Shown: piece after piece, positions 25,719-57,922 of the stretch
How the letters are laid out: each line of letters opens with the position of its first letter
How positions within the stretch are numbered: position 1 is the first letter of the stretch
Assembly (NCBI GenBank): GCA_900088475.1
Contig: FLMG01002622.1
Span: 62,001-126,000 of the forward strand
Length of the DNA: 64,000 nt
Reading direction: 5' to 3'
Origin: Hyphochytrium catenoides
Lineage: Eukaryota; Protista; Hyphochytriomycota
Made by a program: the position numbers and the translations under genes
Notes under the pieces: generated by a model
Databases searched by the model: none
What the model saw: the letters and a program-made list of their open reading frames with translations, nothing else
What the model was told of the DNA's origin: nothing

Positions 25719-28271
25719 TTAGTCTCTTCTCAAGACTCTTCTCCGGCTACCAGCGCCTGCATAACTTCCTTTGTTCGTCGTTGTGGCTGGTCGCACCTGG
25801 GCTGCCTTGGCGCTGGAAGCACTGCTGGCGGCTGACTTTGGCCCTAAGTTCGTGGTCCTGAGTCCATTGCCAGCTCCTCCACTCTGTCCACGGACTGTTT
25901 GAGACTCTCTGGCCGCTCCACCAGCTGCTGACTGTCCGGCACTTGCTCCGCCGCTGTCATAGCCTTGCTCGCCACCGCCGCCAAGCACGCCACTTCCTCC
26001 TCCTTGCCCCGAACCTCCAACCATCCCGGTAAGAGCTTGACCTAAGTTCTGCAGTGGGTTTGCTCCTCCGCCGCCGCCGGCGCCGCCGCCCAGCAGACCA
26101 CCTAAGGCTTGTCCAAGGTTTCCAATGGGGTTACCGTCTCCTCCCCCAGCTCCTCCCCCAGCTCCTCCGCCACCTGTCGCTCCAGCGACAAGGTTGCTGA
26201 CGCCGCTAACTAGAGAACCGATAGCGTCCCCACCGCCGCCGCCACCTGTCGCTCCAGCGACAAGGTTGCTGACGCCGCTAACTAGAGAACCGATAGCGTC
26301 CCCACTGCCTCCGCCCGCAGCTGCGGCTCCGTTAGGATTGGTAGCTTGGATCACTGCATCTGCCAGCCCGGTAGCTAGAGGAGCACCAGCAGTTAGCGCC
26401 GCGCCAATGGGCGCCGCGCCAGGGATAAGAGACAGGACTGGGCCGGCGAGACTTGCGATAGTTCCGGCAGCCTTGGCCGCATTGCCAGCCACGTTAGCTG
26501 CTTGTTTCAAGGCGACCGCGGGGTCCTGAGCCGCCTGGCCTGGAGCGTTAGCAGTCCCAAGATAGCCCTGCTGCCCGTTGCCTCCTTCAGACATGTCACC
26601 GCTTGAAGTTGCTTCAGCTTCTCCCTGTACCTCTCCCTCATTGTACTCTCCTTGGCCCGTTGCCTGGCCGCCCACGGCGTTCTTTGACCGCTGGAAAGCA
26701 CCTGCTCCGGCACTGAGAGCACCGCCGCCTTGCTGCTGATCTGCGTACTCTCCTGTCAGTTCAGCCTGGCTCCCAGTGGCTGGAGAAGGACCTCGAACCG
26801 TCTCAGCAGCTGCGTTGGTTTGCAGTGCCGTGGATCCAGTTGCTGCAGAAAGCGAAGAAGCTTGTCCTCCTCCACCTCCATTGCGTCCACCGAAGAGACC
26901 GGACAAGAGTCCTCCTCCTCCTCCTTGATACCCCCCGAAGTTGATTCCTAGGGCACTCAGGACGTTCTTCTTTAGCTCCACCATCCTGCCCAATAGCCCA
27001 CCAATCCCTGACTGCTCTGGCTGCGGCTGAGGAGCTGGCAGAGAATCAGAGGCAAGCGTCTGCTGTTGTTGCCCAGGTTGGTGCCCGCGTTGATGTTGAC
27101 CCATGTTAGCAGCTCCTGTGCGCTGAAGTTGGTCTACATTCACGCCTCCAGCGGCTCCGGTAGAAATATCTTCAGGCACATTGTCCATGAGTGCTCCAGA
27201 AGCCCCGGCATCGGCTTCTAGGCCAGTGTTCTGCACTTGATGCACAGGGAGAGGCATCTCCTCTCCTTCTAGCGCCGCGCTCTCTCTCTTGACAGCAGAA
27301 GATGTCTCGGTGCGTAAGGAGGGCGAAGAAGGGGTTGGAGACGGAGAGATGATGGCTCTCTGGCTGTGTTCTCTCCTCGCCTGAATCTCCGCTTCCCTCG
27401 TTGTCTCTTCCTCGGACAGCACCTTCTCTTGAACGACAACCTGCGTCTTGGTCTCTGCTGGGCGCTCAGGCTCAATAACATACTCTGTTGCTCTCTCGAG
27501 GTCGCTCCCTTCAGCCACTGCTGTTGAAGCTTCTTCAACCAGCAGCTGCACAGCAGGGCCATTGACCTCCCCAGAGAAAGAGATGCTGTCCACCTGAGAG
27601 TCAGTAGAAGAAGAAGTGGAAGGGCTCTGTCCCTCTACCTCGAGCTGGCTCAGTCTGTCAGGAAGAGACCTTCTGAAATAACTATCGGCATTCACCAGCT
27701 CAGGAAGAGGAGGAAGAGGACCAGTCCCAGCCTTGTAAGGAAGTGTTCCGACCTCTGTCTGGACTGGAGCCCCAGTCTTTGAGGAAGCTGGGACCGTAGG
27801 GACGGTCTCTGAGATCCGTGTCAGAGTCTTGAACAGCGGATCTACGGCCACAATCGCTGCCACTCTGCAGGCTTCTCCACCGTCAGGGCTGGGGCAAGGA
27901 TCTCTTTGAAAGTACTGGACCCAAGCATTCTGCGCCCTCTCAAGATCACGCTGGATGTTCCACTCAATGAGCTTCCGCCAATCTTCTTTATCTTTCTCCG
28001 TCTGCGCATACTTTACGGCTTGGTTGACAGCATCTGCAGGGGCAATTTTCTCCACGTAGCGTGCAGCTTCTCCTCTCCATTGTGCTGCTTGCTCGGGGTT
28101 AGAACGGAGGATGTCATCCCAGGGTGAGCGGAGTTGCTCCTCCGTATAAAGCTGACCAGTGGTAGCGGATGGCGGTGGCCCTCCCATGCTCTGGGCATGG
28201 GTGGCGGCGGGGTGAAGGGAAAGTGCTAAGGTGATGACGGCCAAAACCGCCACGGCTCTAAAAACCTTCAT
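25719..28271 (-). CDS. Intronless 850-aa secreted Gly/Ala/Gln-rich protein of unknown function
   Basis: Long open frame with an N-terminal signal peptide (MKVFRAVAVLAVITLALSLHPAATHA). It contains a near-exact 72-bp tandem repeat (GDAIGSLVSGVSNLVAGATGGGG x2) at ~26167-26305. Confidence 0.85.
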   Translation of the reverse strand: MKVFRAVAVLAVITLALSLHPAATHAQSMGGPPPSATTGQLYTEEQLRSPWDDILRSNPEQAAQWRGEAARYVEKIAPADAVNQAVKYAQTEKDKEDWRKLIEWNIQRDLERAQNAWVQYFQRDPCPSPDGGEACRVAAIVAVDPLFKTLTRISETVPTVPASSKTGAPVQTEVGTLPYKAGTGPLPPLPELVNADSYFRRSLPDRLSQLEVEGQSPSTSSSTDSQVDSISFSGEVNGPAVQLLVEEASTAVAEGSDLERATEYVIEPERPAETKTQVVVQEKVLSEEETTREAEIQARREHSQRAIISPSPTPSSPSLRTETSSAVKRESAALEGEEMPLPVHQVQNTGLEADAGASGALMDNVPEDISTGAAGGVNVDQLQRTGAANMGQHQRGHQPGQQQQTLASDSLPAPQPQPEQSGIGGLLGRMVELKKNVLSALGINFGGYQGGGGGLLSGLFGGRNGGGGGQASSLSAATGSTALQTNAAAETVRGPSPATGSQAELTGEYADQQQGGGALSAGAGAFQRSKNAVGGQATGQGEYNEGEVQGEAEATSSGDMSEGGNGQQGYLGTANAPGQAAQDPAVALKQAANVAGNAAKAAGTIASLAGPVLSLIPGAAPIGAALTAGAPLATGLADAVIQATNPNGAAAAGGGSGDAIGSLVSGVSNLVAGATGGGGGGDAIGSLVSGVSNLVAGATGGGGAGGGAGGGDGNPIGNLGQALGGLLGGGAGGGGGANPLQNLGQALTGMVGGSGQGGGSGVLGGGGEQGYDSGGASAGQSAAGGAARESQTVRGQSGGAGNGLRTTNLGPKSAASSASSAKAAQVRPATTTNKGSYAGAGSRRRVLRRD

Positions 28272-34136: not shown

Positions 34137-35483
34137 ATGGCCTCGTGCTCAATGGAAGAAGCCAGGGGCGGAGGCTGTGCCATCTATCCGTCTCCACCTC
34201 CTCCTTCCGCAGCTCAGCCTATAGCTGCTGCTCCCTCTCCATCGCCTTCTGAGGATACGTGCCAAAGTGGAGAAAGCGGAGCTTGCAAAATTCAATGGAA
34301 GACGCGACGGAACGCCCCTTCTCCTTCCTCGTCTCCGGCTGCCTTGGCAAATGGACATGGAGCCTCTCAAGAAGAAGAAGAGAGAGAGGCTGAAGAGTGC
34401 ACGGAAGAAGGCTGCGCTCTTGTGAGTGTCGAACCCATAGATCCGAGGCTGGGCGCTCCTCTTCGCCTTATAAATAGCCAGCTCACGCTGAAGAGCCCAG
34501 AAGAGATCATCTTATGGGCTAAGGAAAAGTATGGGGATGGACTCATCCTAACCACGTCATTTGGCATACAATCGGCCGTCATGCTGCACATGGTCACGCG
34601 GCTTATCCCTAACATTCCTGTTGTCTGGGTTGACACTGGCTTTCTCCCTAAAGAAACCTATGTCTTCGCGCAAGAACTTATTGAGAGGCTCAACCTGAAC
34701 ATCAAAGTCTATCAACCGCAGCTTTCTGCTGCTCGTCTGGAAGCTCTGTATGGAAAGCTCTGGGAGGCTGAAGCTCCCGAAATGCATGAGTTATATGGAA
34801 CGATCACCAAGGTGGAGCCGATGAACAGAGCTATTGAGGAGCTTAATGCAACGGCAGTCTTTACGGGTCTTCGAGCTAAACAAACGGATCTTCGGAAGAA
34901 GATGCAGATTGTCAACAAGACAAAAGGGAAAGAGCATAAGGTCTGCCCCATTCTCTCCTGGACCGAGAAGGACGTAGATGAGTATCTCTCTCGACACAAT
35001 CTCCCCTACCATCCTCTGAAAGCTCAGGGCTATGAGACCGTAGGAGATGCACATTCTTCACGCCCTGTCAGAGAGGGAGAAACAGATGTAAGGGCCACGC
35101 GGTTCAATGGTAGAGCGCAAGAGTGTGGCTTGCATCTGAATGTTGACGCTGCAGACGCTGAAAAGGCCGGTGAAGAGAAACAGGGGAAGAACAATGTGGA
35201 CCTAGCGCACATTGAAAGGGCGCAGTCCATCCCTGGGCTGGTGCTTTATACACAGCCAAACTGCAAATTTTGCAAAGCTTCAAAATTGCATCTGAAGAAT
35301 CTGCAGATTGCCTTTTCAGAGTTTGGTGTTGGGGATGAAGTCTCTGTTGAGACTCTCATTGCCCGTATTGGACGCACAGTGACCACTGTGCCGCAGATAT
35401 TTATAGATGGCGAGTACTTGGGAGGGTACAAGGAACTTGTGCAGCGTTTCCCTGCTGAGAAGGAGGAGAAAGAAGATGCTTGA
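34137..35483 (+). CDS. cysH: PAPS/APS reductase of the Fe-S-less CysH type fused to a C-terminal glutaredoxin, with a Cys-pair N-terminal extension (intronless, 448 aa)
   Basis: Motifs TTSFGIQSAVMLH, VDTGFLPKETY, KVEPM, TGLR, PYHPL..QGYETVGD and catalytic ECGLH. The CC and CxxC cluster ligands are absent. The Grx domain has YTQPNCKFC...TVPQIFIDGEYLGGY. An in-frame TAA just upstream fixes the start. Confidence 0.95.
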   Translation: MASCSMEEARGGGCAIYPSPPPPSAAQPIAAAPSPSPSEDTCQSGESGACKIQWKTRRNAPSPSSSPAALANGHGASQEEEEREAEECTEEGCALVSVEPIDPRLGAPLRLINSQLTLKSPEEIILWAKEKYGDGLILTTSFGIQSAVMLHMVTRLIPNIPVVWVDTGFLPKETYVFAQELIERLNLNIKVYQPQLSAARLEALYGKLWEAEAPEMHELYGTITKVEPMNRAIEELNATAVFTGLRAKQTDLRKKMQIVNKTKGKEHKVCPILSWTEKDVDEYLSRHNLPYHPLKAQGYETVGDAHSSRPVREGETDVRATRFNGRAQECGLHLNVDAADAEKAGEEKQGKNNVDLAHIERAQSIPGLVLYTQPNCKFCKASKLHLKNLQIAFSEFGVGDEVSVETLIARIGRTVTTVPQIFIDGEYLGGYKELVQRFPAEKEEKEDA

Positions 35484-39696: not shown

Positions 39697-42155
39697 CTTT
39701 CTTTCTCTTCTATGACGCTACTCGACCCTGCTGTCTCCTCCTCAACACTAGAGACCGGAAGTGATCGAGAGGAGGGAGATGGAGCTCTGAAGAGATAAGG
39801 AGAACGGCGAGTCCTTGCTTAGGACTGAGCTAGAAAAATGGTAAAGAAAGGTGACGGGAGAGACAGGGAACTTTGTTGAAAGTTGTTGAGCGACTGTCGA
39901 GCTACCTTGACACAAGAGAGAAAGAGATTTAAAGACAACGAGCTCGGGAGGGAGGGGGAGTGAAAGAGAGGGAGGGACAGAGAGAGAGAGAGACCAAGAG
40001 GGAGAGAGAGACCAAGAGAGAGAAAGAACCAAGAGAGAGAGAGACCACGAGAGAGAGAGAGAGAGAATGCTGACCTTCTTTTGTCTCTTCCCCTCATTCT
40101 GAAGCTTTCTAGTTGGGGGAGAGAGACCCTGAAGAGATTCTCATTGTCAAGGAATGATTACTGCGCAATAATCAATCTGTGGTTCCAATTATCAGTGCTT
40201 TGTATCTGATCTTTCCTGCTATTAAGTAGGACTCCGCTATTTAGATTCTCAAGGATTTGTTACATATTGCTCACAAGGATTTTTTGGCGATAGGATACCG
40301 TTAAATAGGTAAAACATACCCTCCCTACAAATCACTCGATAGCGGACGTAGTACCCACTGACGAGGGGTGTGTCATATATACTTAAGGCTGTAATACATA
40401 AGGATCACTTTATTGGGGGATTGGCCTCAGTGGCTGCGAATCATTGGCTGGTGGCAGGGCTGCCAGTCATTTCTGTGGGGGAATTACAGAAAGTGGAGAG
40501 AGAGAGAGAGAAGAGAGAGANNNNNNNNNNNNNNNNNNNNNNNNNNNNNNNNGAGAGAGAGAGAGAGAGAGAGAGAGAAATAAGAGTCGGCACAAGCCGA
40601 AGAAATTGACTGATAGATGGACCGACAGAGGTATAATAGAGAGAAGACAGATTGATGGAGAGAGAGAAAGAGGAGCTGGGTGATCCAGAGAGAGAGAGAG
40701 ATACAGAGAGACACAAAGAGAGAGAGACTGGAAGAGAGAGATTAAGAGAGCATATCTCAGTGAGATGAAGGATGTTTGGTTGGTGAAGCTTCACAATCTC
40801 TTTCTCTCTCCGGAAAAATTAGCAGGCTCATCTTCACTTTGAAGATCAGTCTCTTTCTTAATAGAAACCATGGCCAAGCCTCAAGAGAAGCAACCGTACA
40901 TCGATAGTCGTGCCAGTCTGGCCTCTCTTGCGGGGCTGGAGAGAGAGAGAGAGAATCTCTTCCTCTCTCTCTCTCTCTCTCTCTGGCGCCCATGAGAGAG
41001 ACAGCGGTGCCTTGAATATGATGGAGAATGTCAGCAGCCCTTCAGGTCGAACTGGGATTGCCATTTTTCATCCCTTTCCTCCTCTTCTCTCCTGGCATAA
41101 GGGCGAAAGTGGAGAGAGAGAGAGAGAGACCATGCCGTTCTTCTCTCTCTCCTTGTCGAAAAGGGTAGAGAGATTAGAGAAAGACTCCCTCGTTTCTTTC
41201 TTCTGGAGTGGCAACCAGAGAAGAAAGCACAGCTCTAACCGGCTTGTGTGGAGTTTCTCTTCCTCTTTATCTCTTAAGGAGGGAGAGAGAGCGGTGTAGG
41301 TCTACTCTCTCTCTTCTTTCTCTCTCTTTCTTTTCTTTCTTCTGTCCCGTTTGCCCAGGAGAGAGAGAGAGGAAAGGAAGGTCCCTTGCTTGGACATTCT
41401 GGGTGAAAGTACTCTGCTTTCTATGGCGTTTCTCTCTCTTTCAGATCTCTCCCAGTGGGAAAAAAGATCTCTTCTTTCTTTCGTTTTTCTGTGCTTCCTG
41501 GGAAGATAGGGGAGAAGAGGAAAGAGAGGTTACGTTGCTGTCTGTTCTCTCTTGAAGACTCTCTCTCACTTCTTAGGCTCTCCTCTTCTTTTGTCTCTTT
41601 CTCTCTCCTCTTTTTCACTGTTTGCCACTTGTTGTATGAACGCAGAGCAAGGAGAAGAGAGAAAGAGGGCTGGGAACAGCTTTCTCTCTCTCTCTCTCTG
41701 CGCCTTGTGATGCATACCTGGTGGCTTCAAACGGAGAAAAAGAGACGAGGAAAGAAGACAGACCGAGGAAAGAGTCTATGAGAGAAGAGAGAGAGAGAAC
41801 AATGACGTTAAAAGCGCTGTAATCTTTCTCTTTCAATCTCTTCTCTCTTTCTCTCCTGGGGAAGGAGGTGAGAGTAAGGACTCTTTTTGGGTCTTTTCTC
41901 TCTAAATCTATGCGTTAGCGCCTGGTTAGAAATGACTGGGAAACCATAGCTGGCGCTTCTCTCAGTTTGTGGCAAGAGAGAGAGAGAAGAAGAGAGAGAC
42001 TTTCTCTCTCTTGCGTCTCTCTCTCTCTTCCAGCACTCTGAGGAACATGTTGTGTGTGGATACGTCTCATGTCACTGTTAGCCTAAGAGGGTTGCCCATT
42101 CTTTCTCCCTTCTCTCTTGTCCTCTCTCTCTTTCTCTCTCTCTTGGCTCCCTCAG

Positions 42156-43842: not shown

Positions 43843-45053
43843 GAGAGAGACACAGAGAAGAGAAACGAGTGATGGAGAGAGAGAGAGAGAAATTGGTCTC
43901 TTTCTCTTTCTTGCACTTGTCCGTTCTCTTATTCTCAACTTATAAAGGAGAGAGAAGTATATATAATGAAGTCTGGCCGCTTCATAAACACCGCAGTGTT
44001 TGCGTCTCTCTCTATTTCTTTTCTCTCTCTCTCTCTCTACTTTCTTTTCTCTCTCTCTCTCACACCTAGTGATCCCCGTCCTAACCAGGGCCTGCAGAGA
44101 TATCCCACTCTCAGGTTCTCAAATAGACGGGGAAGAAGAAAGAAATGTCATTATCTAGCCGACTGTTCTCTCTCTTTGAACAGCTGGTTTGTTACGCATC
44201 CGACAGCTTCTCTCTCTCTCTCTTCCAAAAGCTTTCTCTCGCTTCAGCATCTTTCACTTGTCCAACTTTCTGTCTTCTGTGCGTCCTGACCGAGAGAGAG
44301 AGAAAGAATGCAAGAAATCAGGTTATTAAGACGGAACGGAACGTCTTTGAAATAAAAAAGAGATTAAAAAGACCTAGAGCAAGTTCCTGATGCGCCGCCT
44401 CGTCTCTCTCCTTCCTCAGCCGTTTGCCTTGATAGGACTTCTCTCTCTCTCTCTCTCCTACAAGTAATTAGAACTTCTCTATTAGCCTGTTGTCAACCTG
44501 ATTCCTTAGTCTCTGTTCTATCATAATCATTAGGAGAGGTCCTCTTTCTTTCTTTCTCTCTCTCTCTCTCTCTTCGCAGAGTTTATCGTGGCCCCACTGC
44601 TTTCTGCTATTACCGAAGGGAAGGGAGTGCTCACAGCAAGACAGAGAAAGAATCACATATATGCTTTGAACGCAATGATTTTTCTTCTCTCTTCCTCGTT
44701 CTCTCTCCTCACCGTGCATCTCTCTTTGTCTATTAGATTAGGGCTTCTACTCCCTCTCTTGTCTCTTGTTTCTCTCTCTCTCTTCCATTTTGCTACTTTC
44801 GAGAGCCCTTCATCAAATCCTTCTCTCTTTGTCCCTTTCTTCGCCTTGACCTGTCTGCAACTTTGTAGCTTATGCTTCCCCTTCTTTCTCTTTCTCTCTC
44901 TCTCTCTCCACCTTAACCTCTCTGAACTTTGTAGCTTATGCTTCCCCTTCTTTCTCTCTCTCTCTCTGTCTCTCTCTCTCTCTCTNNNNNNNNNNNNNNN
45001 NNNNNNNNNNNNNNNNNNNNNNNNNNNNNNNNNNNNNNNNNNNNNNNNNNNNN

Positions 45054-45093
<40 letters not shown>

Positions 45094-45100
45094 AGCTGGC

Positions 45101-45514
45101 TCAAGGCGCAACCTTCTGTGTGAATCTATTGAACGTGATGAGCAGGAAAGGGCTGAGCGCGTCCACCGCGGGCTTTCCAAGCGCGCTCTTCTCTAATCTC
45201 TGGAGCATTACGACAGTGTTATGCTGGACCGTCACTGAAGGATGGAGGAGGCCTACGGCCAGAGGATGGAGACCGCCTTGGGACTCGGGGAGGTAAGAGA
45301 GAGAGAGAGAGAGAGAGAGTTAAGGAGAGACAACCGCGGTGGAGAGAGAGAGAGAAAGAGGAGAGAGTGTGAGAGAGAGAGAAAGGGGGGGTTGAGGTTA
45401 TGAGGTGAAGAAAGAGAGACAGACAGACAGACAGAGAAGGTAGAATAGGGAGTTGCGCGAGCCTGATGAAGGGAAGAAAGAGAGAGAGAAGGATGAAAGA
45501 GCGAGAGAACACAC

Positions 45515-45562
<48 letters not shown>

Positions 45563-45619
45563 NNNNNNNNNNNNNNNNNNNNNNNNNNNNNNNNNNNNNN
45601 NNNNNNNNNNNNNNNNNNN

Positions 45620-45652
<33 letters not shown>

Positions 45653-46592
45653 AAGAGAGAGAAAGAAAGAGTCGATGGGTAGGATATGTAACATAGAAGC
45701 TCCTTGATGTCTTCTTCTTCCTTCAGAAGAGAGACAAAGTCCGTAAAGATTCTCTCCACTTCTTCCTCTCCCAGGCCCCGCCGGCTACTCAGCCGACGGA
45801 GGTGGCGGCGAAGATCTACACCCGCAACTGAGCGCTGAAGAGAGAGAACATGAGAGAGAGGGAAGAGGGATGTGAGAGAAAATTGAGGGAGAGAGAGGGA
45901 AACTGCGGGGAGAGAAAGAGAGAGTGAGAGACAGAGAGAGATGATGACCCGGGATAACCAGAGAGAAGGAGAAGGGCAGAGAATTTACAGCAGGAGAAGG
46001 AGGGTTGTGGGAAGATAGGTTGAAAGAGAGAGACACTGCAAAAGGAGAGAGAAGAGAGTGAGAAGACAGAAATGAGAGAGGGCGGGTGGAAGGAAGAGAG
46101 ACAGAAAGATGAGAGGGATACTAATGGGGAGGAGGAGAGAGAGAAGAGCGAGACAGATCATTCTCCTTACATTGAAGGCCTTCGAAGAGGACGCAGAAAG
46201 AGGAGAGGACGTAGAGGAGAGAGGAGATGAAGAGAGAGAGAGAAAGACGTTGTCATATGTGTTCGTCTGTTTCCAGGCCTCCACCCGCGGGCCGTTCACT
46301 TGCCACGCCATCTCTTTCACTTCCGGAGAAGAGAACTCACTGAGATCAAAGGCTAGCTCTACGATAGTCTAGAGACCGAGAGAGCGAGAGGCAAGAGAGA
46401 GAGAGAGAGAGAGGCAAGAGAGAGAGAGAGAGACACACACACAGAGAAGGGCAAGGAGAAGGGAGACAAAAGATGAGGGAGACAACGAGAGAGAGATTTG
46501 TTTAAGAGAAGGAGGAGGAAGCTTATATAATTACATAGGTAAAGAGATAGCTAGTAAAAAGAGAGAGGAAAACAGCTTAATAGTAAGAAAGT

Positions 46593-46657
<65 letters not shown>

Positions 46658-47161
46658 AGAGGGGCAGAGACAACCAGCGCACCGAAGGATAGAGAGGCGT
46701 TCAAAAATGCTTCAGAGATTACGGAGACGAAGGAGGACGAGAAAGAAAGAGCAAGAGAGGAAACAAACGAGAGAAAAGCGGAATCGACTGACAGAGAGAG
46801 AGAGAGAGAGAGAAAGAGAGTCTCTCGTTGGTACCTTCTCGGTGTAATAGTGGAACATATTCTTAGCCCAATCGACGCCGTGGCCGGCCTTCAGCCCTTC
46901 CAGGACGCGAGAGATAAAATCCTTGTCCAGCGCAGCGAAGGGAGGAGGATCATTTTCCTCCTGAGCTGAAGAGAGAAGCGAGGAGAAGGAAATAAGTTGC
47001 CGGAGTCTATAAGGGCGGGGGGAGGGGGAGAGAGAAAGAGAAAGAGAGAGAGGGAGAGAGAGAGAAAGAAACAGAGAGCAAGAGCGAAGGGGAGGCGCCA
47101 TCACACCCCCCGATAGAATGGGATGCGGGGCGGAAGAGAGAGAGAGACAAAGAGAGAGCGA

Positions 47162-47203
<42 letters not shown>

Positions 47204-47468
47204 AGTGGAAGAGCCGACCGTACCACTGGTAATAGTGCCTGTGTTTATGTCAGCGAGGATGTCCCACCACTCTTTCTTAGAGAGAAACATTGGGTTCGTC
47301 ACACCAGCGAGGTATCCCGGCACAGAAAGAAAGGAAAGATCTGTCAAGTGTGCGATCCTTGGGAGAGAAAGAGAGAACAGGAGGAGGAGAGAGGATATGA
47401 GGACAGAGACAGAGAGGATATGAGGACAGAGAGAGAGAGGATATATGAGAACAGAGAGAGAGAGAGAA

Positions 47469-47518
<50 letters not shown>

Positions 47519-47848
47519 TGTTAGAGCCGAAGACGGAGAGAGAGCAGAGAGGGGAGAAGAAAAGCTAGAGAAAGAGGAGAGAGAGAGAGGTAGGAAGAGA
47601 GAGGGGTGATAGGGAAAGAAGAGAGAAGACAGAGGTTTAGGAGGCAGAGAAGGTAAAAAGCTAAAAGGAGAACAGCTTTAGAACGCTGGACCCAGGCAAC
47701 CCATCATAAAAGATAAGGAAGCCTCGAGCAAAGGTAGTGAGAACACGGAGGAGACAATATGAGAGAGACAGAGAGAAAAGAGCAGAGAGATTCGAGACAA
47801 GAAATGAGGGAGAGAGAGACAGAGAGAGACAGAAAGAAAGAGAGAGAA

Positions 47849-47881
<33 letters not shown>

Positions 47882-49322
47882 ACAGAGAGAGAGAGAGGGA
47901 GATGGAATCAAGTGCAACACTTACGGGTACATCCTATGGATAATACCTTCCAACGGTGGACAGAGGAGAACCGCAGTCGCCATGACCAGAGAGCAGAGTT
48001 TCCCTGGATTTTCGATATTGAAAGGCCTTGTCAGCGGTAAGGCCGAGACACTCATTCTTTCTCTCTCTCTTCCCCTTTCTTCTCTTTCTTTCTCTCTCTC
48101 GCCGGCGCTGGTCGTTTGTCGCAAGTTTCCTAACCCTGCGCACTGTCTCTCTTGATAGTCTTTTCCAAACGTGTCTCTCTTAAAATCCCTCTGCTCGGTT
48201 GCCATTCTTAGACCATCCTCTTCTTATTCTTTCTCTCTCTTTCTCGCTCGCTCGCTCGCTCTCTCGTTTTCTCCCTTTCTCTTCCTCGTCTATCGTCCTC
48301 TCTCCCTCATTTCCCTTCTTCTCTCAAGCATTCCTGGTAGCTGACTTTCTCTCTCTCTTTGCTGATCTCCTCTGGACTTCCTTTCTCTCTTGGTCCTCTC
48401 TCTCTCTTGGCTCTCTCTCTCTCTCTCTTTCCCAGTTCTCTTCTTTCTCTCTCTGTCTCGTCTCTCTGGTTCTGCCTTTCTTTGTCCCACCTGCTGGTGC
48501 GTTGTGTCCTACAAAGAGGACTCTCTTCCCCATGAGAATGGCATTGTAGATCATCATCACATCCTCTCCAAACGTCTGAAGGAGGTCGACGAGAGACGCG
48601 TAGCCAACCTGGGAAAGAGAAATGGAGAGGAAAAAAGAGAGGGAGAGAGAGAGAGTAGCATATTCAAGAGAGAGAGAGAGTTGGAAAGTGTTACCCAAAG
48701 AGAGAAAGACTGGAGGTATTTCTCTCTTCCCTGGTAGGCAATGTCAATTCTAATCTCTCTCTTCAGTACCTTGCATTGCACTTTCTATCGCTTCAGCTCC
48801 ATGACAAGCGCGTTCTTGCTTGACCTTCGAAGTCTTCTATTTTCTCACTCTCTCTCTCTCTCTCTCTCGCTCCCCTCTCCGACTCTCGTACAGGTCACAG
48901 ATAAACTTCTCTCCCTCTCTGTCTCTAAAACCTCTGTCTCTCTCTCACTTCCTCTGAGCATGTCTGACTTCCTCTGAGCATGTCTGTCTTCCTCTTCATA
49001 GTTCTTCCCTATATTCCCTGTGCCTGAGTACTGTCTCTTTCTCTTTCTCTTTCTCTCTCTCTCTCTCACTCTCCTTGTCTGTCTCTCCGTCTCTTCCTCG
49101 CTCTTCTCCTCAGTCTCTCTCTCTCCTGTGTGTACGGTGTGTCTCTCTCACCTCATCTGGACTGCGATCGAGCGGGATCTTGAGAGGGACAAGAGAGCCT
49201 TCCCAATCCGCTGTCGTCTCGAAATATCGAGCCACAGGGAGCTTTCTCTCTCCTCCTGTTCCCTAGAAAGTGTACATAGGATAAAATTAGATTTTTCTTC
49301 ATCAGCGCACCCATTCGAGCCC

Positions 49323-49379
<57 letters not shown>

Positions 49380-50287
49380 CTCTCTCTCTCCCTCTCTCTC
49401 TCTCTTCTTTTTGTGCGAGCTCTAAGCTCCTGCATCCTGAAACACCCAATGCAGGCATTCATCCGCCCTAAACCCTTGCCCAGCTTTGATCTTCCTCTCT
49501 CTCTTCCGTTCTCTCTCCTTTTACTATCTCTCTCTTTCTTTCTCTCTTTCGCTTTTCTCTCTCCCAAACAAGATGTTTCTCTCTATCATACCATCGGAGC
49601 TGTACCCGGCGTCCATCTTCTAATAAAGAGACGGTCGATGGGAGATGAAGGAGGGAGAGAAGAGAAATCGATGGAGTTGAGGACTTTGAAGAGAGAAGCG
49701 AGTATCTCTCTCTGAGTCTCAACAGAAGAGGGAGAAGGGAGAGAGAACGCCTTGTCCAGCGCTTGTCGGATGATGTCACGGTATTCGAAAACCACCTGCA
49801 GAAGGCAGGGAAAGAAAGAGGGACAGAGAGTAGAGAGAAGAGAGAGAGAGAAAAGAAAGAAGGGGCGGAGCGAGAGGGCGAGAGCGAGAAGGGAGACAGA
49901 GAGAACAGACGGAGAGAGAGGGAGGGAGAGAAAGAGAGGAAGCCAGTGAAAGAATGAGAAAGAGAGGCATGTTAGAGAGAGCGAGAAAGCATCCGTGAGA
50001 AGAAGAAAGAGCCAGAGAGCGGTTGGCAGATAGGAACATGACTGAGAAAGCTTCAAGGAAGAGCGAGAGACAGACAGGTCAACTGAGATAAGGAATGGTG
50101 TGGGATGAGAGAAAAAGGAGAAAGAGAGATAGAAGAAAAAAGAAAAAGAGAGAGAGAGAGAAGTAAAGACAGAGTTGATAGCCAAAATGCTATAAAAAGA
50201 ACAAGAGCAACTGGCAGGAAACAGTATGTAAGAAAGGAGAGCGACAGTGTCAGCTACAGACTTTCTCCGTCTCCTCTGTTGGCCATG

Positions 50288-50319
<32 letters not shown>

Positions 50320-50505
50320 CTCCCCTTTTTGCTTTCTCTCTCTCTTCTCTTCCTGGAGACAATCGTGGCACCTGATCCTTGGCGCAGACTGCGATCGCTT
50401 TCACAGTTGCTCCTCTGCGGACGGAGCTGTCGTGCTTGGTTCGGACCAAATTCATGCAGTACAGCAGTTGTCCGCCTGAACAGAGAGAAGAGCGAGAGGG
50501 AGACA

Positions 50506-50562
<57 letters not shown>

Positions 50563-50726
50563 GTAAGAGAAGGCTAAAGACGATCATCGAAGGGGGAATC
50601 GCATAGAGGAATTTATGCCTTTCATAGAGGAGAAGGAAAAAGGATAGAGAGGATAGAGAGAGGCACACATAGGGGAAGAGAGAGAAAGAAGGAGACAGAG
50701 AGAGAGAGAGAGAAATAGAGAGAGAA

Positions 50727-50781
<55 letters not shown>

Positions 50782-51415
50782 AATTAGAGAAAGAGAGCAT
50801 AAGGCGGAGAGGCAGAAGCGGAACGCAGGCGGAGGGAAAGAGAGAACGAGTGACGAGAGCGAGAGAGAGAGAAAAAGAGATGTCATGAGCTGCACCGGTT
50901 GCTTTGTTCTCTCCCTCTGCACTTGGGACGTCAGCGCCAGCTGCTGCGGACTTCAATTGATCTACAGCCACAACTTTAGGGCGACTCTCTCAATCTCTCT
51001 CTTTCTCTGTCTCTTCACCTCTTTCTCCTGTCTCATCCAAAAATGAGGGTATTTCTCTTCGTCTCTTCTATTTCTCTTCGTCTCTTCCTCTTTTCTCAGC
51101 CTTTCTGCATCTAATGATGTCTTTTCCCTTCTCTTCACTTCTATCGAGGTGGGGCTCTTCTCTTCCTTGCTGTCTCCTCGTTCTTCTCGCTCCTCTTCCT
51201 ACACTTCCACTCACGTACAGATGGCCCCTCTTTTCTCTCTCTTTGTCCACTCTCTCTCTCTTTCTTTCTCTCTCTCGCTCACACACACATTGACACACTC
51301 ATTTCTCTTTTTTCTTTCTTATGTCCCACAATATTGATAATTCTTCTTTCTCCTGCCCTCAAGGTCTCTCTCTCGCCTTCCCTCGTCCTCCGTCCTCGCG
51401 CGTCTCTCGCGCGCT

Positions 51416-51466
<51 letters not shown>

Positions 51467-51673
51467 GATTGTCTCTCTTCAACTCCTTCCCTTACCTTTG
51501 TCTCTATTCAGCAGGAAAGCCGTCCAGTCTTCCTCTCGATTGTGCGCACCTTCTGGCAGCATACAATCCGCGAAGTATTCGTCGCTAACGTGCGGAACTC
51601 GGTCCGGGAAGGCGCAGCGCAGTGTGCTGCCCTTGTCAATGTCAAACTCAGCAAACAGGACGTAGGAAGCCAT
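45101..51673 (-). CDS. Afi1/MesA-like (Afi1 docking + SPA, DENN/AVL9-like) protein, ~12 exons
   Basis: Spliced motifs AEFDIDKGS...MLPEGAHNREEDWTAFLL, NLVRTKHDSSVRRGATVKAIA, IYNAILMGKRVLFVG, GYLAGVTNPMF..WWDILADINTG and LPESQGGLHPLAVGLLHP. Stop codon TGA at 45101-45103. Confidence 0.88.
45293..45687 (-). other. U12-type (minor spliceosome) AT-AC intron
   Basis: 5' end ATATCCTA; branch site TCCTTAAC at 45326-45319; 3' end TTAC 26 nt downstream of it. Removing the intron gives in-frame KELLCY|LPESQGGL. Confidence 0.85.
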
Positions 51674-52260
51674 TGGAACGAGAGAGAGAGAGAGACAGAG
51701 AGAGAGAGACAGAGAGAAAAAGAGTGAAGGAGAGAGAGAGAAGAGGAAATAGCGGAGAGACGAGCAGACGCACCGCGAAGATAGAGCCAGAGAGAGAGAA
51801 TGAGAGAGGACCAGAGGCGCGGCGTCAATGGTCCAGCTGTTGAGCGATTGCCTGACGCAAAAGCTTCCTTCTTTGAAGGTTGCTCCTTAAGTCAAAGAAT
51901 TCAACACACAGTTGTGGGAGAGGAGAGAGAGGTTGACGGAGGGAGGAACAGAGAGAGAGAGAGAACACGGGAAGAGAGAGAGAGGCAGCGAGAGAGAGAG
52001 AGAGAGAAGACAAGAGAGAGACTATTTTTTCCCTATGAGGAGAAAGATCTCAGTCTGGTGTGACCTTTGGCGAATACTATTCGTAATAACACAACACTCA
52101 TTCCATTATAATGTTACACCAGACGACATCGATTCCACATAATCCCTAACAGGGGCGGCACATTAACAAATCTGCAGATTAGAATCTGCAAACTCTGTCT
52201 GCAGATCTGCAGAGCGTCCGAAGTCTGAAGCTCTTCTGTCTTTGCGTCGTAGCTTTTCCA

Positions 52261-52582: not shown

Positions 52583-52917
52583 TCTTTCTCTCCTTGAGCT
52601 TCTCTTGCTATGTACAAGACTCACCTCAACTCGTAGACTCTTGATTGTTTGCCGATCAACAATCCCCCGGACGGGATCCACAAGGTAGACTTGACTAGGA
52701 GGAGGAGATGGGTGCACAGACCTACATTTTGGGATGGAGAGAAAGATGAGAGAGAGAGAAAGAGAGAGAGAGAACAGGGAAAGTAAGAGACAGAGAAAAA
52801 TGGAAAGAGAGAGAGCTAAATGAAGAGGTAACTATTGCGTAACGTACTTCTTGTCTCTCTTCAGCCTTAGCATAATTTCATGACCTATGATGGATCTCCC
52901 TCTCCTTTCTCTTCCTC

Positions 52918-52970
<53 letters not shown>

Positions 52971-56371: not shown

Positions 56372-57399
56372 TATTTCTCTCCTTCTCTCCTTCCCCTCTC
56401 TCACTCTGCCTCCCTCTCTCTTCGAGGTCTTATCCTCTCTCCCCTTCAATGCATTCTCTCTATCGCTCTATCTCTCCTTTCTTCTTCTCTCTTTCTCTCT
56501 CCTACCAGACTGCACGGCGGTCGTCTCTTCTCTTCCCTTTCTTGGCCTACTGCAGGTGGCTTTCTGCTCCTTGACCATGATTTCTACGCGCTTTGAGTTC
56601 TCTGGGTCCCGAAGAAGATCGACCAGAGACGAAGTGCATGTTTCTCTCTCTTGTTCTCTCTCTATCTTTCTACTTCTCTCTTCCCCACCCATGTTTTCTC
56701 TTTCTCTCTCTTCTCGAGGGCTTCTCATATTGAGCTTTGCCAGGCTTTGACCTTCTCTTCCTGTCGCTGCATTGAAAAGGAACGAGCAACAGCCCCTTCT
56801 TAGTAGCCGTAAGAAAAGAGAGAGAGAGAGAACGAGAGAGAGAGAGAAAGAGAGACAGAGAGAGGCACTATGTAGGGCGCAGAGACAGAGAGAGAAGGAG
56901 GAAAGAGAGAAAAGAGGATGGAGCTACTGGTAAGCTCTCATGCTTCAGAACGATCTTTTTACTTTCCGTAGTAATCTCTCTCTCTTTCTCTCTCTCTCTC
57001 TCCCTCCTTTCTTTTCTTCTGCTCTTATACCTGTGGCTCCTCTGGAGGGAGAGACGTCCGGTGTGTCCGGGAAAGACTTCAGATGGTTTGTCCCTGACAG
57101 TCTTTTCTTTCCTTTGAGGGAAAGAGATGAAGAGAGAGAAGGAGAGGAAGACTGGGTCTTGCTTCTCAGGGAAGTAGTAGAAGAACGAGGAGACGTGCTC
57201 GGAGGGCGGTGAGCGCGAGTTGATGATCTGAAATAATGGAAGAAAGAGAAGAGGGAGAGAGAGAAAAGAGAGAGAGAGAGAGAAAAAGAAAGAGGGAGAG
57301 AGATTAAGAAAAGGGAGAGGAGGGTGAGTGAGGGTGCAAGACAAGAGAGGAAGCAATCAATGGCATCGGTTAGCTTTTTGAGCCGCAATCGGATTATTC

Positions 57400-57430
<31 letters not shown>

Positions 57431-57922
57431 CCTCTCACTCGATAGTCTCTTCCGTCTCTCTCTCTCTCTCTCGCTCCCTCACTTGATAGTCTCTTTCGTC
57501 TCTCTCTCTCTCTTTTTCCCTCACTCGATAGTTTCTTTTGGAAAGGCAGGCCTCTCCCTAGTCTATTTTCTCTCAGTTGCTAGGCTCCTCCCAAAGATGT
57601 GAGACTCCCTCTTCTTCTCTCTTCTCTCTCCTCACCTTGGGCTTGGCTTTCGCTCAGCAGCACGAGGAGAGATCTGTGGCCGTCTCCCCTGGGCCATTCC
57701 TTCGGGAGAAGAAGAGAGAGGGAGAGAAGAGGAAGAGAGAGAGGGAGAGAGAGAGGAAGGAGCAGCTGCAGTGCTAATCTGAAGTTTGCTCGCGGCGCCA
57801 AAGAGAAAGCTGGGGACAGAGGAGGAAGAAGAGAGAGAAGGAGATCTTCCGGCCGCCCTCTCTCTCGCTTCTCTCTCTCCTCTTCCCATAGCACCAGTAC
57901 TATCAGAGGTATGGGAGGTCAT
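52261..57922 (-). CDS. Uncharacterised, largely disordered Ser/Arg-rich protein with coiled-coil segments (~13 exons)
   Basis: A chain of mostly phase-consistent GT-AG exons runs from MTSHTSDS (57922) through RKDSLESIERLEELLERQHLELFG to TTPRPWRSHLTR* (52261). Two middle junctions are ambiguous. No domain recognised. Confidence 0.6.

What the first reader, a model, noticed from the sequence alone, without database searches (positions are those of the whole stretch)
45293..45687. U12-type AT-AC intron: evidence for a minor spliceosome in this organism
Seen: on the minus strand an exon ends TGT TAC, followed by ATATCCTA. A perfect TCCTTAAC lies 26 nt before ...CTCTTAC, and CTC CCC GAG TCC CAA GGC follows. 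No AG acceptor precedes these codons. Known: ATATCCTT, TCCTTAAC and a terminal AC are the U12 consensus signals, and LPESxGGL fits the Afi1/MesA C-terminus. Minor introns are patchily distributed in stramenopiles (known in oomycetes, lost in lineages such as diatoms). Inference: this genome keeps a functional U11/U12 system that standard gene finders would mis-splice. The (CT)n expansion has also invaded the gap between branch site and acceptor.
Basis: partly seen in the sequence, partly recalled or inferred. Interest (0 to 1): 0.85.

Follow-up and report, generated by a model that had tools for sequence, protein, structure and literature searches.

The report
Minor-spliceosome (U12) AT-AC intron
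The last intron of a vesicle-traffic (Afi1/SPA, DENN-like) gene in this oomycete-related protist is a real minor-spliceosome (U12-type) AT-AC intron by sequence and by comparison with relatives. It is an expected find, because sister lineages and other genes of this genome already show such introns.

Summary
On the minus strand an exon ends ...TGT TAC. The intron runs 45687 to 45293 and starts ATATCCT. A perfect TCCTTAAC lies at 45326-45319, followed by 24 pyrimidines, mostly (TC)n, and then AC. The next exon starts CTC CCC GAG TCC CAA GGC.

The gene is an Afi1/SPA (DENN-like, Arf3-interacting) gene. Joining the two exons at AT-AC gives ...LLCY|LPESQGGL.... This aligns without a gap to 47 relatives, including transcript-derived ones, across the family's most conserved motif.

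I scored 68 possible splice pairs on a profile of the relatives. AT-AC scores 135.6 bits and the best GT-AG pair about 103 bits. The intron holds one AG, 171 nt upstream of the exon. The N gap lies inside the intron and hides no codons.

The atypical point is spacing: the branch A sits 27-28 nt from the 3' end, against a known optimum of 11-13 nt.

I found no RNA evidence, and there are no minor snRNA genes in this window. The organism groups with oomycetes, probably Hyphochytrium, where minor introns are expected.

The scan has noted this kind of intron before on other DNA of this genome: 42 notes match 'U12', and several were followed up. This is a real new member of a known kind, of low to moderate interest.

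The parts
45101..51673 (-). Afi1/SPA-family (DENN-like, Arf3-interacting) gene, about 12 coding exons, from the start ATG at 51673 to the TGA at 45103-45101
   Evidence: Pfam Afi1 PF07792 E 2e-15 on the first exon; SPA PF08616 E 4.9e-10 and 8.7e-06 on middle exons. tblastn of five full-length relatives gives collinear blocks along 51676..45104.
45688..45834 (-). Penultimate coding exon (49 codons, RSVAGVDL...KELLCY), preceded by an ordinary ...TCTTCAG acceptor
   Evidence: Translation; aligned to relatives; upstream acceptor seen.
45293..45687 (-). U12-type AT-AC intron in phase 0. Nominal length is 395 nt, including a 57-N gap of unknown true length. It is 88% pyrimidine.
   Evidence: It is the best-scoring of 68 candidate splice pairs (135.6 bits).
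45681..45687 (-). 5' splice site ATATCCT (then A, C). Matches 7 of the 8 bases of the RTATCCTT consensus.
   Evidence: consensus from PMC10853781.
45563..45619 (.). Assembly gap (N) inside the intron, flanked by (CT)n arrays
   Evidence: No residues are missing in relatives.
45319..45326 (-). Branch-point sequence TCCTTAAC, 8 of 8 to the TCCTTRAY consensus. Candidate branch adenosines are 45321 and 45320.
   Evidence: These are the only A residues in the last 47 nt apart from the terminal AC.
45295..45318 (-). 24-nt all-pyrimidine spacer, (TC)11 plus TT, between the branch-point sequence and the 3' end
45293..45294 (-). 3' terminal AC of the intron
   Evidence: The exon resumes at 45292 with the Leu codon that aligns to the family's LPES motif.
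45101..45292 (-). Last coding exon (63 codons plus TGA): LPESQGGLHPLAVGLLHP...
   Evidence: It has 54 relatives in the representative library, nearly all aligning from its first residue.

Best explanation
The stretch 45687-45293 (minus strand) is the last intron of an Afi1/SPA-family gene. It is a U12-type (minor-spliceosome) intron of the AT-AC subtype, in phase 0.

Inferred mechanism, from established knowledge of minor splicing:
1. The U11/U12 di-snRNP binds the 5' splice site ATATCCT through U11 and the branch sequence TCCTTAAC through U12, bulging one of its two adenosines.
2. U4atac/U6atac.U5 joins, and U6atac replaces U11 at the 5' splice site.
3. The branch A attacks the bond between C45688 and A45687.
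4. Exon ligation then takes place after the first purine-containing site downstream of the branch, the AC at 45294-45293. This joins TAC to CTC and gives ...LLCY-LPESQGGL....

Shown here: the signals, their exact placement, and that only this junction reproduces the conserved protein. Inferred: actual use of the junction in RNA, the branch adenosine, and the presence of the minor snRNPs in the organism.
For: - Sequence signals sit at the exact borders.
- The gene's identity is established.
- Exon B finds 54 relatives, and nearly all align from its residue 1.
- Exons A and B joined at AT-AC align as one HSP across the junction. Several alignments have equal query and subject lengths: P0022 108 against 108, P0003 109 against 109.
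- The multiple alignment of 47 relatives has no gap at the junction, and (F/L)LS(Y/L)LPE(S/A)QGGL is its most conserved block. The set includes transcript-derived proteins from Ancoracysta and Cyanophora and EukProt TSA entries.
- tblastn places relative P0002's Y717 on TAC 45690-45688 and its E720 on GAG 45286-45284. That leaves exactly two codons, L718-P719, to fall on CTC CCC at 45292-45287.
- Of 68 GT/GC-AG and AT-AC/AG pairs, AT45687-AC45293 scores 135.6 bits on a profile built without the window. The next best is 116.2, and the best GT-AG pairs score 102.7-103.8.
- Sliding the borders by 1-4 nt gives the same mRNA but the termini CA-TA, AC-TT, TA-CT or TT-TC. None of these is a known intron class (read).
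- There is only one AG in the whole intron, 171 nt from exon B.
- The other introns of the gene whose borders I read start GT, and the intron just upstream of exon A ends in ...CAG.
- The branch-point position falls inside the 8-30 nt window used by SpliceRack (PMC1557818).
- The organism groups with oomycetes, which have minor introns (PMC10639083).
- Earlier unchecked notes report an RNA-confirmed U12 intron in ICMT and an RNPC3 gene in this genome.
Against: - No transcript or own-organism protein covering the junction could be found.
- The branch adenosine is 27-28 nt from the 3' end, about twice the 11-13 nt optimum and beyond the classical 10-20 nt window (PMC3584512, PMC1557818).
- The spacer is a pure pyrimidine tract, whereas typical U12 introns lack one.
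- Position +8 is A rather than T.
- No relative was found with an intron at the same position, so positional conservation gives no support.
- The intron contains an assembly gap.
Confidence: 0.9

Rival explanations
1. The intron is an ordinary U2-type GT-AG intron using the weak donor T|GTTACA (45692) and the AG inside exon B (CCCAAG|GC, 45277). This gives ...ELLC-GLHPLAV....
For: The pair exists and keeps the frame. Standard gene finders would tend to pick it.
Against: It deletes YLPESQG, the most conserved block of the family. It scores 102.7 bits against 135.6. The donor GTTACA is unlike the GTAAG/GTGAG/GTGGG donors of the neighbouring introns. It leaves the perfect U12 signals unexplained.
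Confidence: 0.03
2. The intron is U12-type, but the main 3' splice site is the in-frame AG nine bases further on (GAG| at 45284), giving ...LLCY-SQGGL.... Alternatively, both sites are used.
For: It is in frame and second best on the family profile, at 116.2 bits. Selection of the U12 3' splice site is known to be error-prone (PMC3584512).
Against: It removes LPE, which is nearly invariant. It lies even further from the branch site, 36-37 nt. AT-AG combinations are reported as disfavoured (PMC3584512).
Confidence: 0.04
3. The apparent intron is an assembly artefact, or the N gap hides a further exon or mis-joined scaffold pieces, so the AT-AC borders are meaningless.
For: A 57-N gap lies in the intron. 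(CT)n arrays clearly troubled the assembler, and another gap follows the stop codon at 45036-45093.
Against: Both flanks carry consecutive, same-strand, collinear parts of one protein, with no residue missing at the join. Both U12 signals lie outside the gap, in unambiguous sequence.
Confidence: 0.02
4. The intron has AT-AC ends but is removed by the major (U2-type) spliceosome, like the rare U2-type AT-AC introns of SCN4A and SCN5A.
For: Such introns exist (PMC1557818). A long pyrimidine tract precedes the 3' end, as in U2-type introns.
Against: U2-type AT-AC introns match the U1-type donor apart from position +1. Here the donor is ATATCCT, the U11/U6atac type, and a perfect U12 branch sequence is present. 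Pyrimidine-rich 3' ends are general to introns of this genome.
Confidence: 0.02

Closest known systems
Canonical U12-type AT-AC introns of animals and plants (5' RTATCCTT, branch TCCTTRAY, 3' AC)
   Same: AT-AC termini, ATATCCT donor and a perfect TCCTTAAC branch sequence near the 3' end (consensus in PMC10853781 and PMC3584512).
   Different: The branch A is 27-28 nt from the 3' end instead of the 11-13 nt optimum. The spacer is an all-pyrimidine (TC)11 microsatellite, whereas typical U12 introns lack a pyrimidine tract. Position +8 is A. The intron is in phase 0, the phase least used by minor introns in most species (PMC10639083).
Minor introns of oomycetes (Phytophthora: few; Saprolegnia: dozens) and of Blastocystis (hundreds, 77% AT-AC), PMC10639083
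   Same: Stramenopile lineage: the neighbouring CysH-glutaredoxin gene is closest to oomycete proteins at 46-52% identity. Same intron class.
   Different: The host organism is not an oomycete and is probably a hyphochytrid. No paper in the searched library links Hyphochytrium to U12 or minor splicing. No orthologous oomycete intron was found for comparison.
U2-type AT-AC introns (SCN4A, SCN5A; PMC1557818)
   Same: Terminal dinucleotides AT and AC.
   Different: Those have a U1-type donor (ATAAGT-like) and no U12 branch sequence. This intron has the reverse.

Membership tests
U12-type (minor-spliceosome) intron, AT-AC subtype | 5' splice site matching RTATCCTT from the first intron base | tested here: met
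   ATATCCTA at 45687-45680, 7 of 8 bases with +1 to +7 exact.
U12-type (minor-spliceosome) intron, AT-AC subtype | Branch-point sequence TCCTTRAY close to the 3' end | tested here: met
   TCCTTAAC at 45326-45319, 8 of 8 bases. Its two A residues are the only adenosines within 47 nt of the 3' end apart from the terminal AC.
U12-type (minor-spliceosome) intron, AT-AC subtype | Short branch-to-3'-splice-site distance (optimum 11-13 nt, classical window 10-20 nt) | tested here: inconclusive
   The distance is 27-28 nt. That is outside the optimum and the classical window (PMC3584512) but inside the 8-30 nt window of SpliceRack (PMC1557818). The length of the (TC)n spacer could also be polymorphic or mis-assembled.
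U12-type (minor-spliceosome) intron, AT-AC subtype | Terminal dinucleotides AT...AC at borders fixed by independent evidence | tested here: met
   The borders are fixed by gapless alignment to 47 relatives and by the profile scoring of 68 candidate pairs.
U12-type (minor-spliceosome) intron, AT-AC subtype | No distinct polypyrimidine tract before the 3' splice site | tested here: not met
   A 24-nt all-pyrimidine run lies between the branch sequence and AC. This is a typical rather than a strictly defining trait, and CT-rich intron ends are general in this genome.
U12-type (minor-spliceosome) intron, AT-AC subtype | Removal from RNA at these borders | not testable with these tools
   No transcript or own-organism protein of this gene was found.
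U12-type (minor-spliceosome) intron, AT-AC subtype | Organism possesses U11, U12, U4atac and U6atac snRNAs and minor-specific proteins | not testable with these tools
   None lie in this 64-kb window and the rest of the genome is out of reach. An earlier unchecked note reports an RNPC3 gene.
Afi1/SPA (MesA, Arf3-interacting, DENN-like) protein family | N-terminal Afi1 domain and central SPA domain | tested here: met
   PF07792 E 2e-15; PF08616 E 4.9e-10 and 8.7e-06. The exons are collinear with full-length relatives.
Afi1/SPA (MesA, Arf3-interacting, DENN-like) protein family | Conserved C-terminal block ...LSYLPESQGGL...LN.FL..(A/T)(Y/F).R | tested here: met
   Present once exons A and B are joined at AT-AC.

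The most novel reading that the evidence does not exclude
The minor spliceosome of this lineage tolerates a branch-to-3'-splice-site distance about twice the animal and plant optimum. It would choose the 3' site as the first purine-containing dinucleotide after a purine-free microsatellite, not by a strict ruler. The length of the (TC)n spacer, which is mutable, would then tune or threaten splicing of this gene. Together with the other notes for this genome, the intron would also help document minor splicing in hyphochytrids, for which I found no published report.
Probability: 0.25. Interest if true: 0.45.

Novelty: new member of a known kind. Interest (0 to 1): 0.27.

Why it matters
This adds one well-supported U12-type intron to a stramenopile lineage for which no report of minor splicing turned up in the searched literature (probably Hyphochytrium, sister to oomycetes).

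It also matters for annotation. A GT-AG-only gene finder would drop or truncate the conserved C-terminal exon, or delete the LPESQG motif.

The unusually long, microsatellite-filled spacer between the branch site and the 3' end is a small natural test of how strictly the minor spliceosome measures that distance.

None of this changes the picture of minor-intron evolution. Presence in a close relative of oomycetes is expected.

Tried and rejected
RNA or own-protein evidence, all negative:
- A word search with a stop-free ORF that contains a real exon found nothing.
- A profile search seeded with all window exons found only relatives at about 50% identity.
- An exact look-up of the neighbouring intronless CysH product is not on record.
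- An exact 23-mer of exon B has no match in JGI metagenome contigs.

I did not type the joined protein into any tool, so no search was run with the spliced product itself.

Positional conservation of the intron, no support found:
- The relatives P0089 and P0007 are intronless at this site.
- Acrasis kona (P0068) has no intron there.
- Short relatives whose ORFs begin near the junction turn out to break 4-6 residues upstream or not at all.
- A degenerate scan for branch sequence + AC/AG + LPExQGGL codons in metagenome contigs gave one hit (L005). It is a chance match in an unrelated ORF.

Ideas dropped:
- I first thought this intron differed from its neighbours by lacking a purine-rich 5' arm. 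The four preceding intervals between exon blocks are equally pyrimidine-rich at both ends.
- A second candidate, GTATCCT at 40298 (minus strand) with TTCCTTGAC 18 nt before a CAG, lies in sequence without a visible reading frame and was not taken further.
- The sub-threshold Rfam hits are all GA/CT low-complexity hairpins. No minor snRNA is among them.

Full report
**What is in the sequence.** Read on the minus strand, a coding exon ends ...GAG CTT CTA TGT TAC at 45688. The next bases, 45687-45680, are ATATCCTA. Further on, TCCTTAAC occupies 45326-45319. It is followed by 24 pyrimidines, (TC)11 plus TT, at 45318-45295, and then by AC at 45294-45293. At 45292 an open frame resumes with CTC CCC GAG TCC CAA GGC and runs for 63 codons to the TGA at 45103-45101.

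The stretch between the exons is 395 nt as assembled and 88% pyrimidine. It contains a single AG, at 45464, which is 171 nt before the downstream exon. Its last 47 nt hold no adenosine except the two in TCCTTAAC and the one in the terminal AC.

**The assembly gap.** The 57 N at 45563-45619 sit between two (CT)n arrays, well inside the intron. The gap begins 68 nt after the 5' border and ends 270 nt before the 3' border. Relatives show no residue missing between the two exons, so the gap hides no exon. It matters only for the intron's true length.

**The gene.** The exons belong to a roughly 12-exon minus-strand gene running from 51673 to 45101. Its first exon matches Pfam Afi1 (E 2e-15), and middle exons match SPA (E 4.9e-10 and 8.7e-06). 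Five full-length relatives give collinear tblastn blocks along the whole span. Sources name relatives 'Arf3-interacting protein', 'UDENN domain-containing protein', 'mesa protein' and 'Stabilization of polarity axis'.

**Is the junction right?**
- A search of 1.84 billion representative proteins with the last exon alone gave 54 hits. Nearly all align from its first residue.
- The penultimate and last exons joined at AT-AC align as one segment across the join. Several alignments have equal lengths on both sides.
- In a multiple alignment of 47 relatives there is no gap at the join. The window's ...ELLCY|LPESQGGLHPLAV... lies on the family's best conserved block, (F/L)LS(Y/L)LPE(S/A)QGGL.
- Some relatives come from transcriptomes (Ancoracysta, Cyanophora, EukProt TSA entries), so their continuity is at the RNA level.
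- tblastn puts relative P0002's Y717 on TAC 45690-45688 and its E720 on GAG 45286-45284. That leaves exactly the two codons CTC CCC for L718-P719.

I then enumerated all 68 GT/GC-AG and AT-AC/AG pairs around the two borders. Each product was scored on a profile built from the relatives without the window.

| Splice pair | Product at the join | Score (bits) |
|---|---|---|
| AT45687-AC45293 | CY-LPESQGG | 135.6 |
| AT-AG, 9 nt downstream | CY-SQGG | 116.2 |
| Another GT-AG pair, with a junk insert | not applicable | 103.8 |

TTAC ends both the exon and the intron, so the borders can be slid by 1-4 nt without changing the mRNA. The slid versions have the termini CA-TA, AC-TT, TA-CT or TT-TC. Only the unslid AT-AC belongs to a known intron class.

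**More than chance?** Singly, the motifs are unremarkable in this CT-rich window. ATATCCT occurs 8 times against 4.0 expected, and three of those copies lie in one repeat. TCCTTAAC occurs twice against 1.7 expected. The joint event is very improbable: one motif starts exactly where homology ends, and the other lies within 30 nt of where homology resumes, with AT and AC at borders fixed independently. My estimate from the window frequencies is about 1e-8.

**What it is and how it works.** By the usual criteria this is a U12-type AT-AC intron: 5' RUAUCCUU, branch UCCUURAY, AT-AC ends (PMC10853781, PMC3584512). The other introns of the gene whose borders I read begin with GT (GTAAG, GTGAG and similar), and the intron just upstream of exon A ends in ...CAG.

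The mechanism is inferred from what is known of minor splicing. U11 pairs with the donor and U12 with the branch sequence. U6atac then replaces U11. One of A45321 and A45320 acts as the branch. Ligation follows after the AC, the first purine-containing site downstream of the branch.

A U2-type AT-AC intron is unlikely, because those keep a U1-type donor (PMC1557818).

**What is atypical.**
- The branch adenosine is 27-28 nt from the intron's end. The reported optimum is 11-13 nt, and older schemes required 10-20 nt (PMC3584512, PMC1557818). SpliceRack accepted 8-30 nt (PMC1557818).
- The spacer is a pure pyrimidine microsatellite, whereas U12 introns usually lack a pyrimidine tract.
- Position +8 is A rather than T.
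- The intron is in phase 0.

These points lower confidence only slightly, because no other adenosine and no AG is available near the exon. They are the one mildly interesting feature of the intron. That the (CT)n 'invaded' the spacer is a fair description, but its history is untested.

**Organism and context.** The neighbouring intronless CysH-glutaredoxin gene (34137-35483) has oomycetes as its best full-length named relatives: Globisporangium, Pythium, Aphanomyces, Phytophthora, Saprolegnia and others. They match at 46-52% identity over 92-96% of the searched region. A diatom follows at 42%. This fits a stramenopile near, but outside, the oomycetes.

Earlier notes of this scan, which I did not check, name Hyphochytrium catenoides. 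They also report 42 notes matching 'U12' in this genome. Among these are an RNA-confirmed AT-AC intron in ICMT, several homology-backed ones, and an RNPC3 gene.

The literature reports minor introns in Phytophthora, Saprolegnia and Blastocystis and none in Ochrophyta (PMC10639083). The Hyphochytrium genome paper does not discuss them. No paper in the library couples Hyphochytrium with U12 or with the minor spliceosome.

**What could not be shown.**
- No transcript or own-organism protein for this gene was reachable.
- No minor snRNA lies in the window.
- No relative with an intron at the same position was found.

**Verdict.** I put 0.9 on a genuine U12-type AT-AC intron. It is a new member of a known kind, in a lineage where it is expected, and this scan has already seen the same kind of intron many times in this genome. 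The practical value is for annotation. The only oddity worth a specialist's glance is the long microsatellite spacer before the 3' splice site.

Noticed in passing
window 47392-47444 (minus strand): Three copies of ATATCCT spaced 23 nt apart lie inside an upstream intron of the same gene, within an imperfect CT-rich repeat and 40-90 nt before the next exon. They account for 3 of the 8 ATATCCT hits in the window. They are probably just repeat units. Tandem U12-type donors are the known form of U11-binding splicing enhancers (USSE, PMC3584512), so I record them.
   Followed up: partly
window 40128-40298 (minus strand): GTATCCTAT at 40298 and TTCCTTGAC at 40154, 18 nt before a CAG, would make a U12-type GT-AG intron of about 170 nt. 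The flanks show no obvious reading frame, so this is either a UTR intron or chance.
   Followed up: partly
window 34137-35483 (plus strand): An intronless 448-codon CysH (PAPS reductase) fused to a C-terminal glutaredoxin. The same fusion is the top hit in many oomycetes at 46-52% identity, and bacterial (cyanobacterial) CysH proteins match the reductase part at 54-60%. The N-terminal 100 residues or so are low-complexity.
   Followed up: partly
window 45036-45093: A second N gap lies a few bases after the gene's stop codon, embedded in a (GA)n array on the minus strand. (CT)n/(GA)n arrays seem to be where this assembly breaks.
   Followed up: no
window 25719-28271 (minus strand): An 850-codon intronless ORF in the only GC-rich stretch of the window (GC 0.59). 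It has a signal-peptide-like start and a long Gly/Ala/Ser/Gln-rich low-complexity body. I did not search it.
   Followed up: no
window-wide, e.g. 52748-52966, 57107-57531: Permissive Rfam scanning gives dozens of sub-threshold 'miRNA' and 'snoRNA' hits that all fall on GA/CT arrays able to fold back on each other. They are false positives typical of this genome's intron composition.
   Followed up: no
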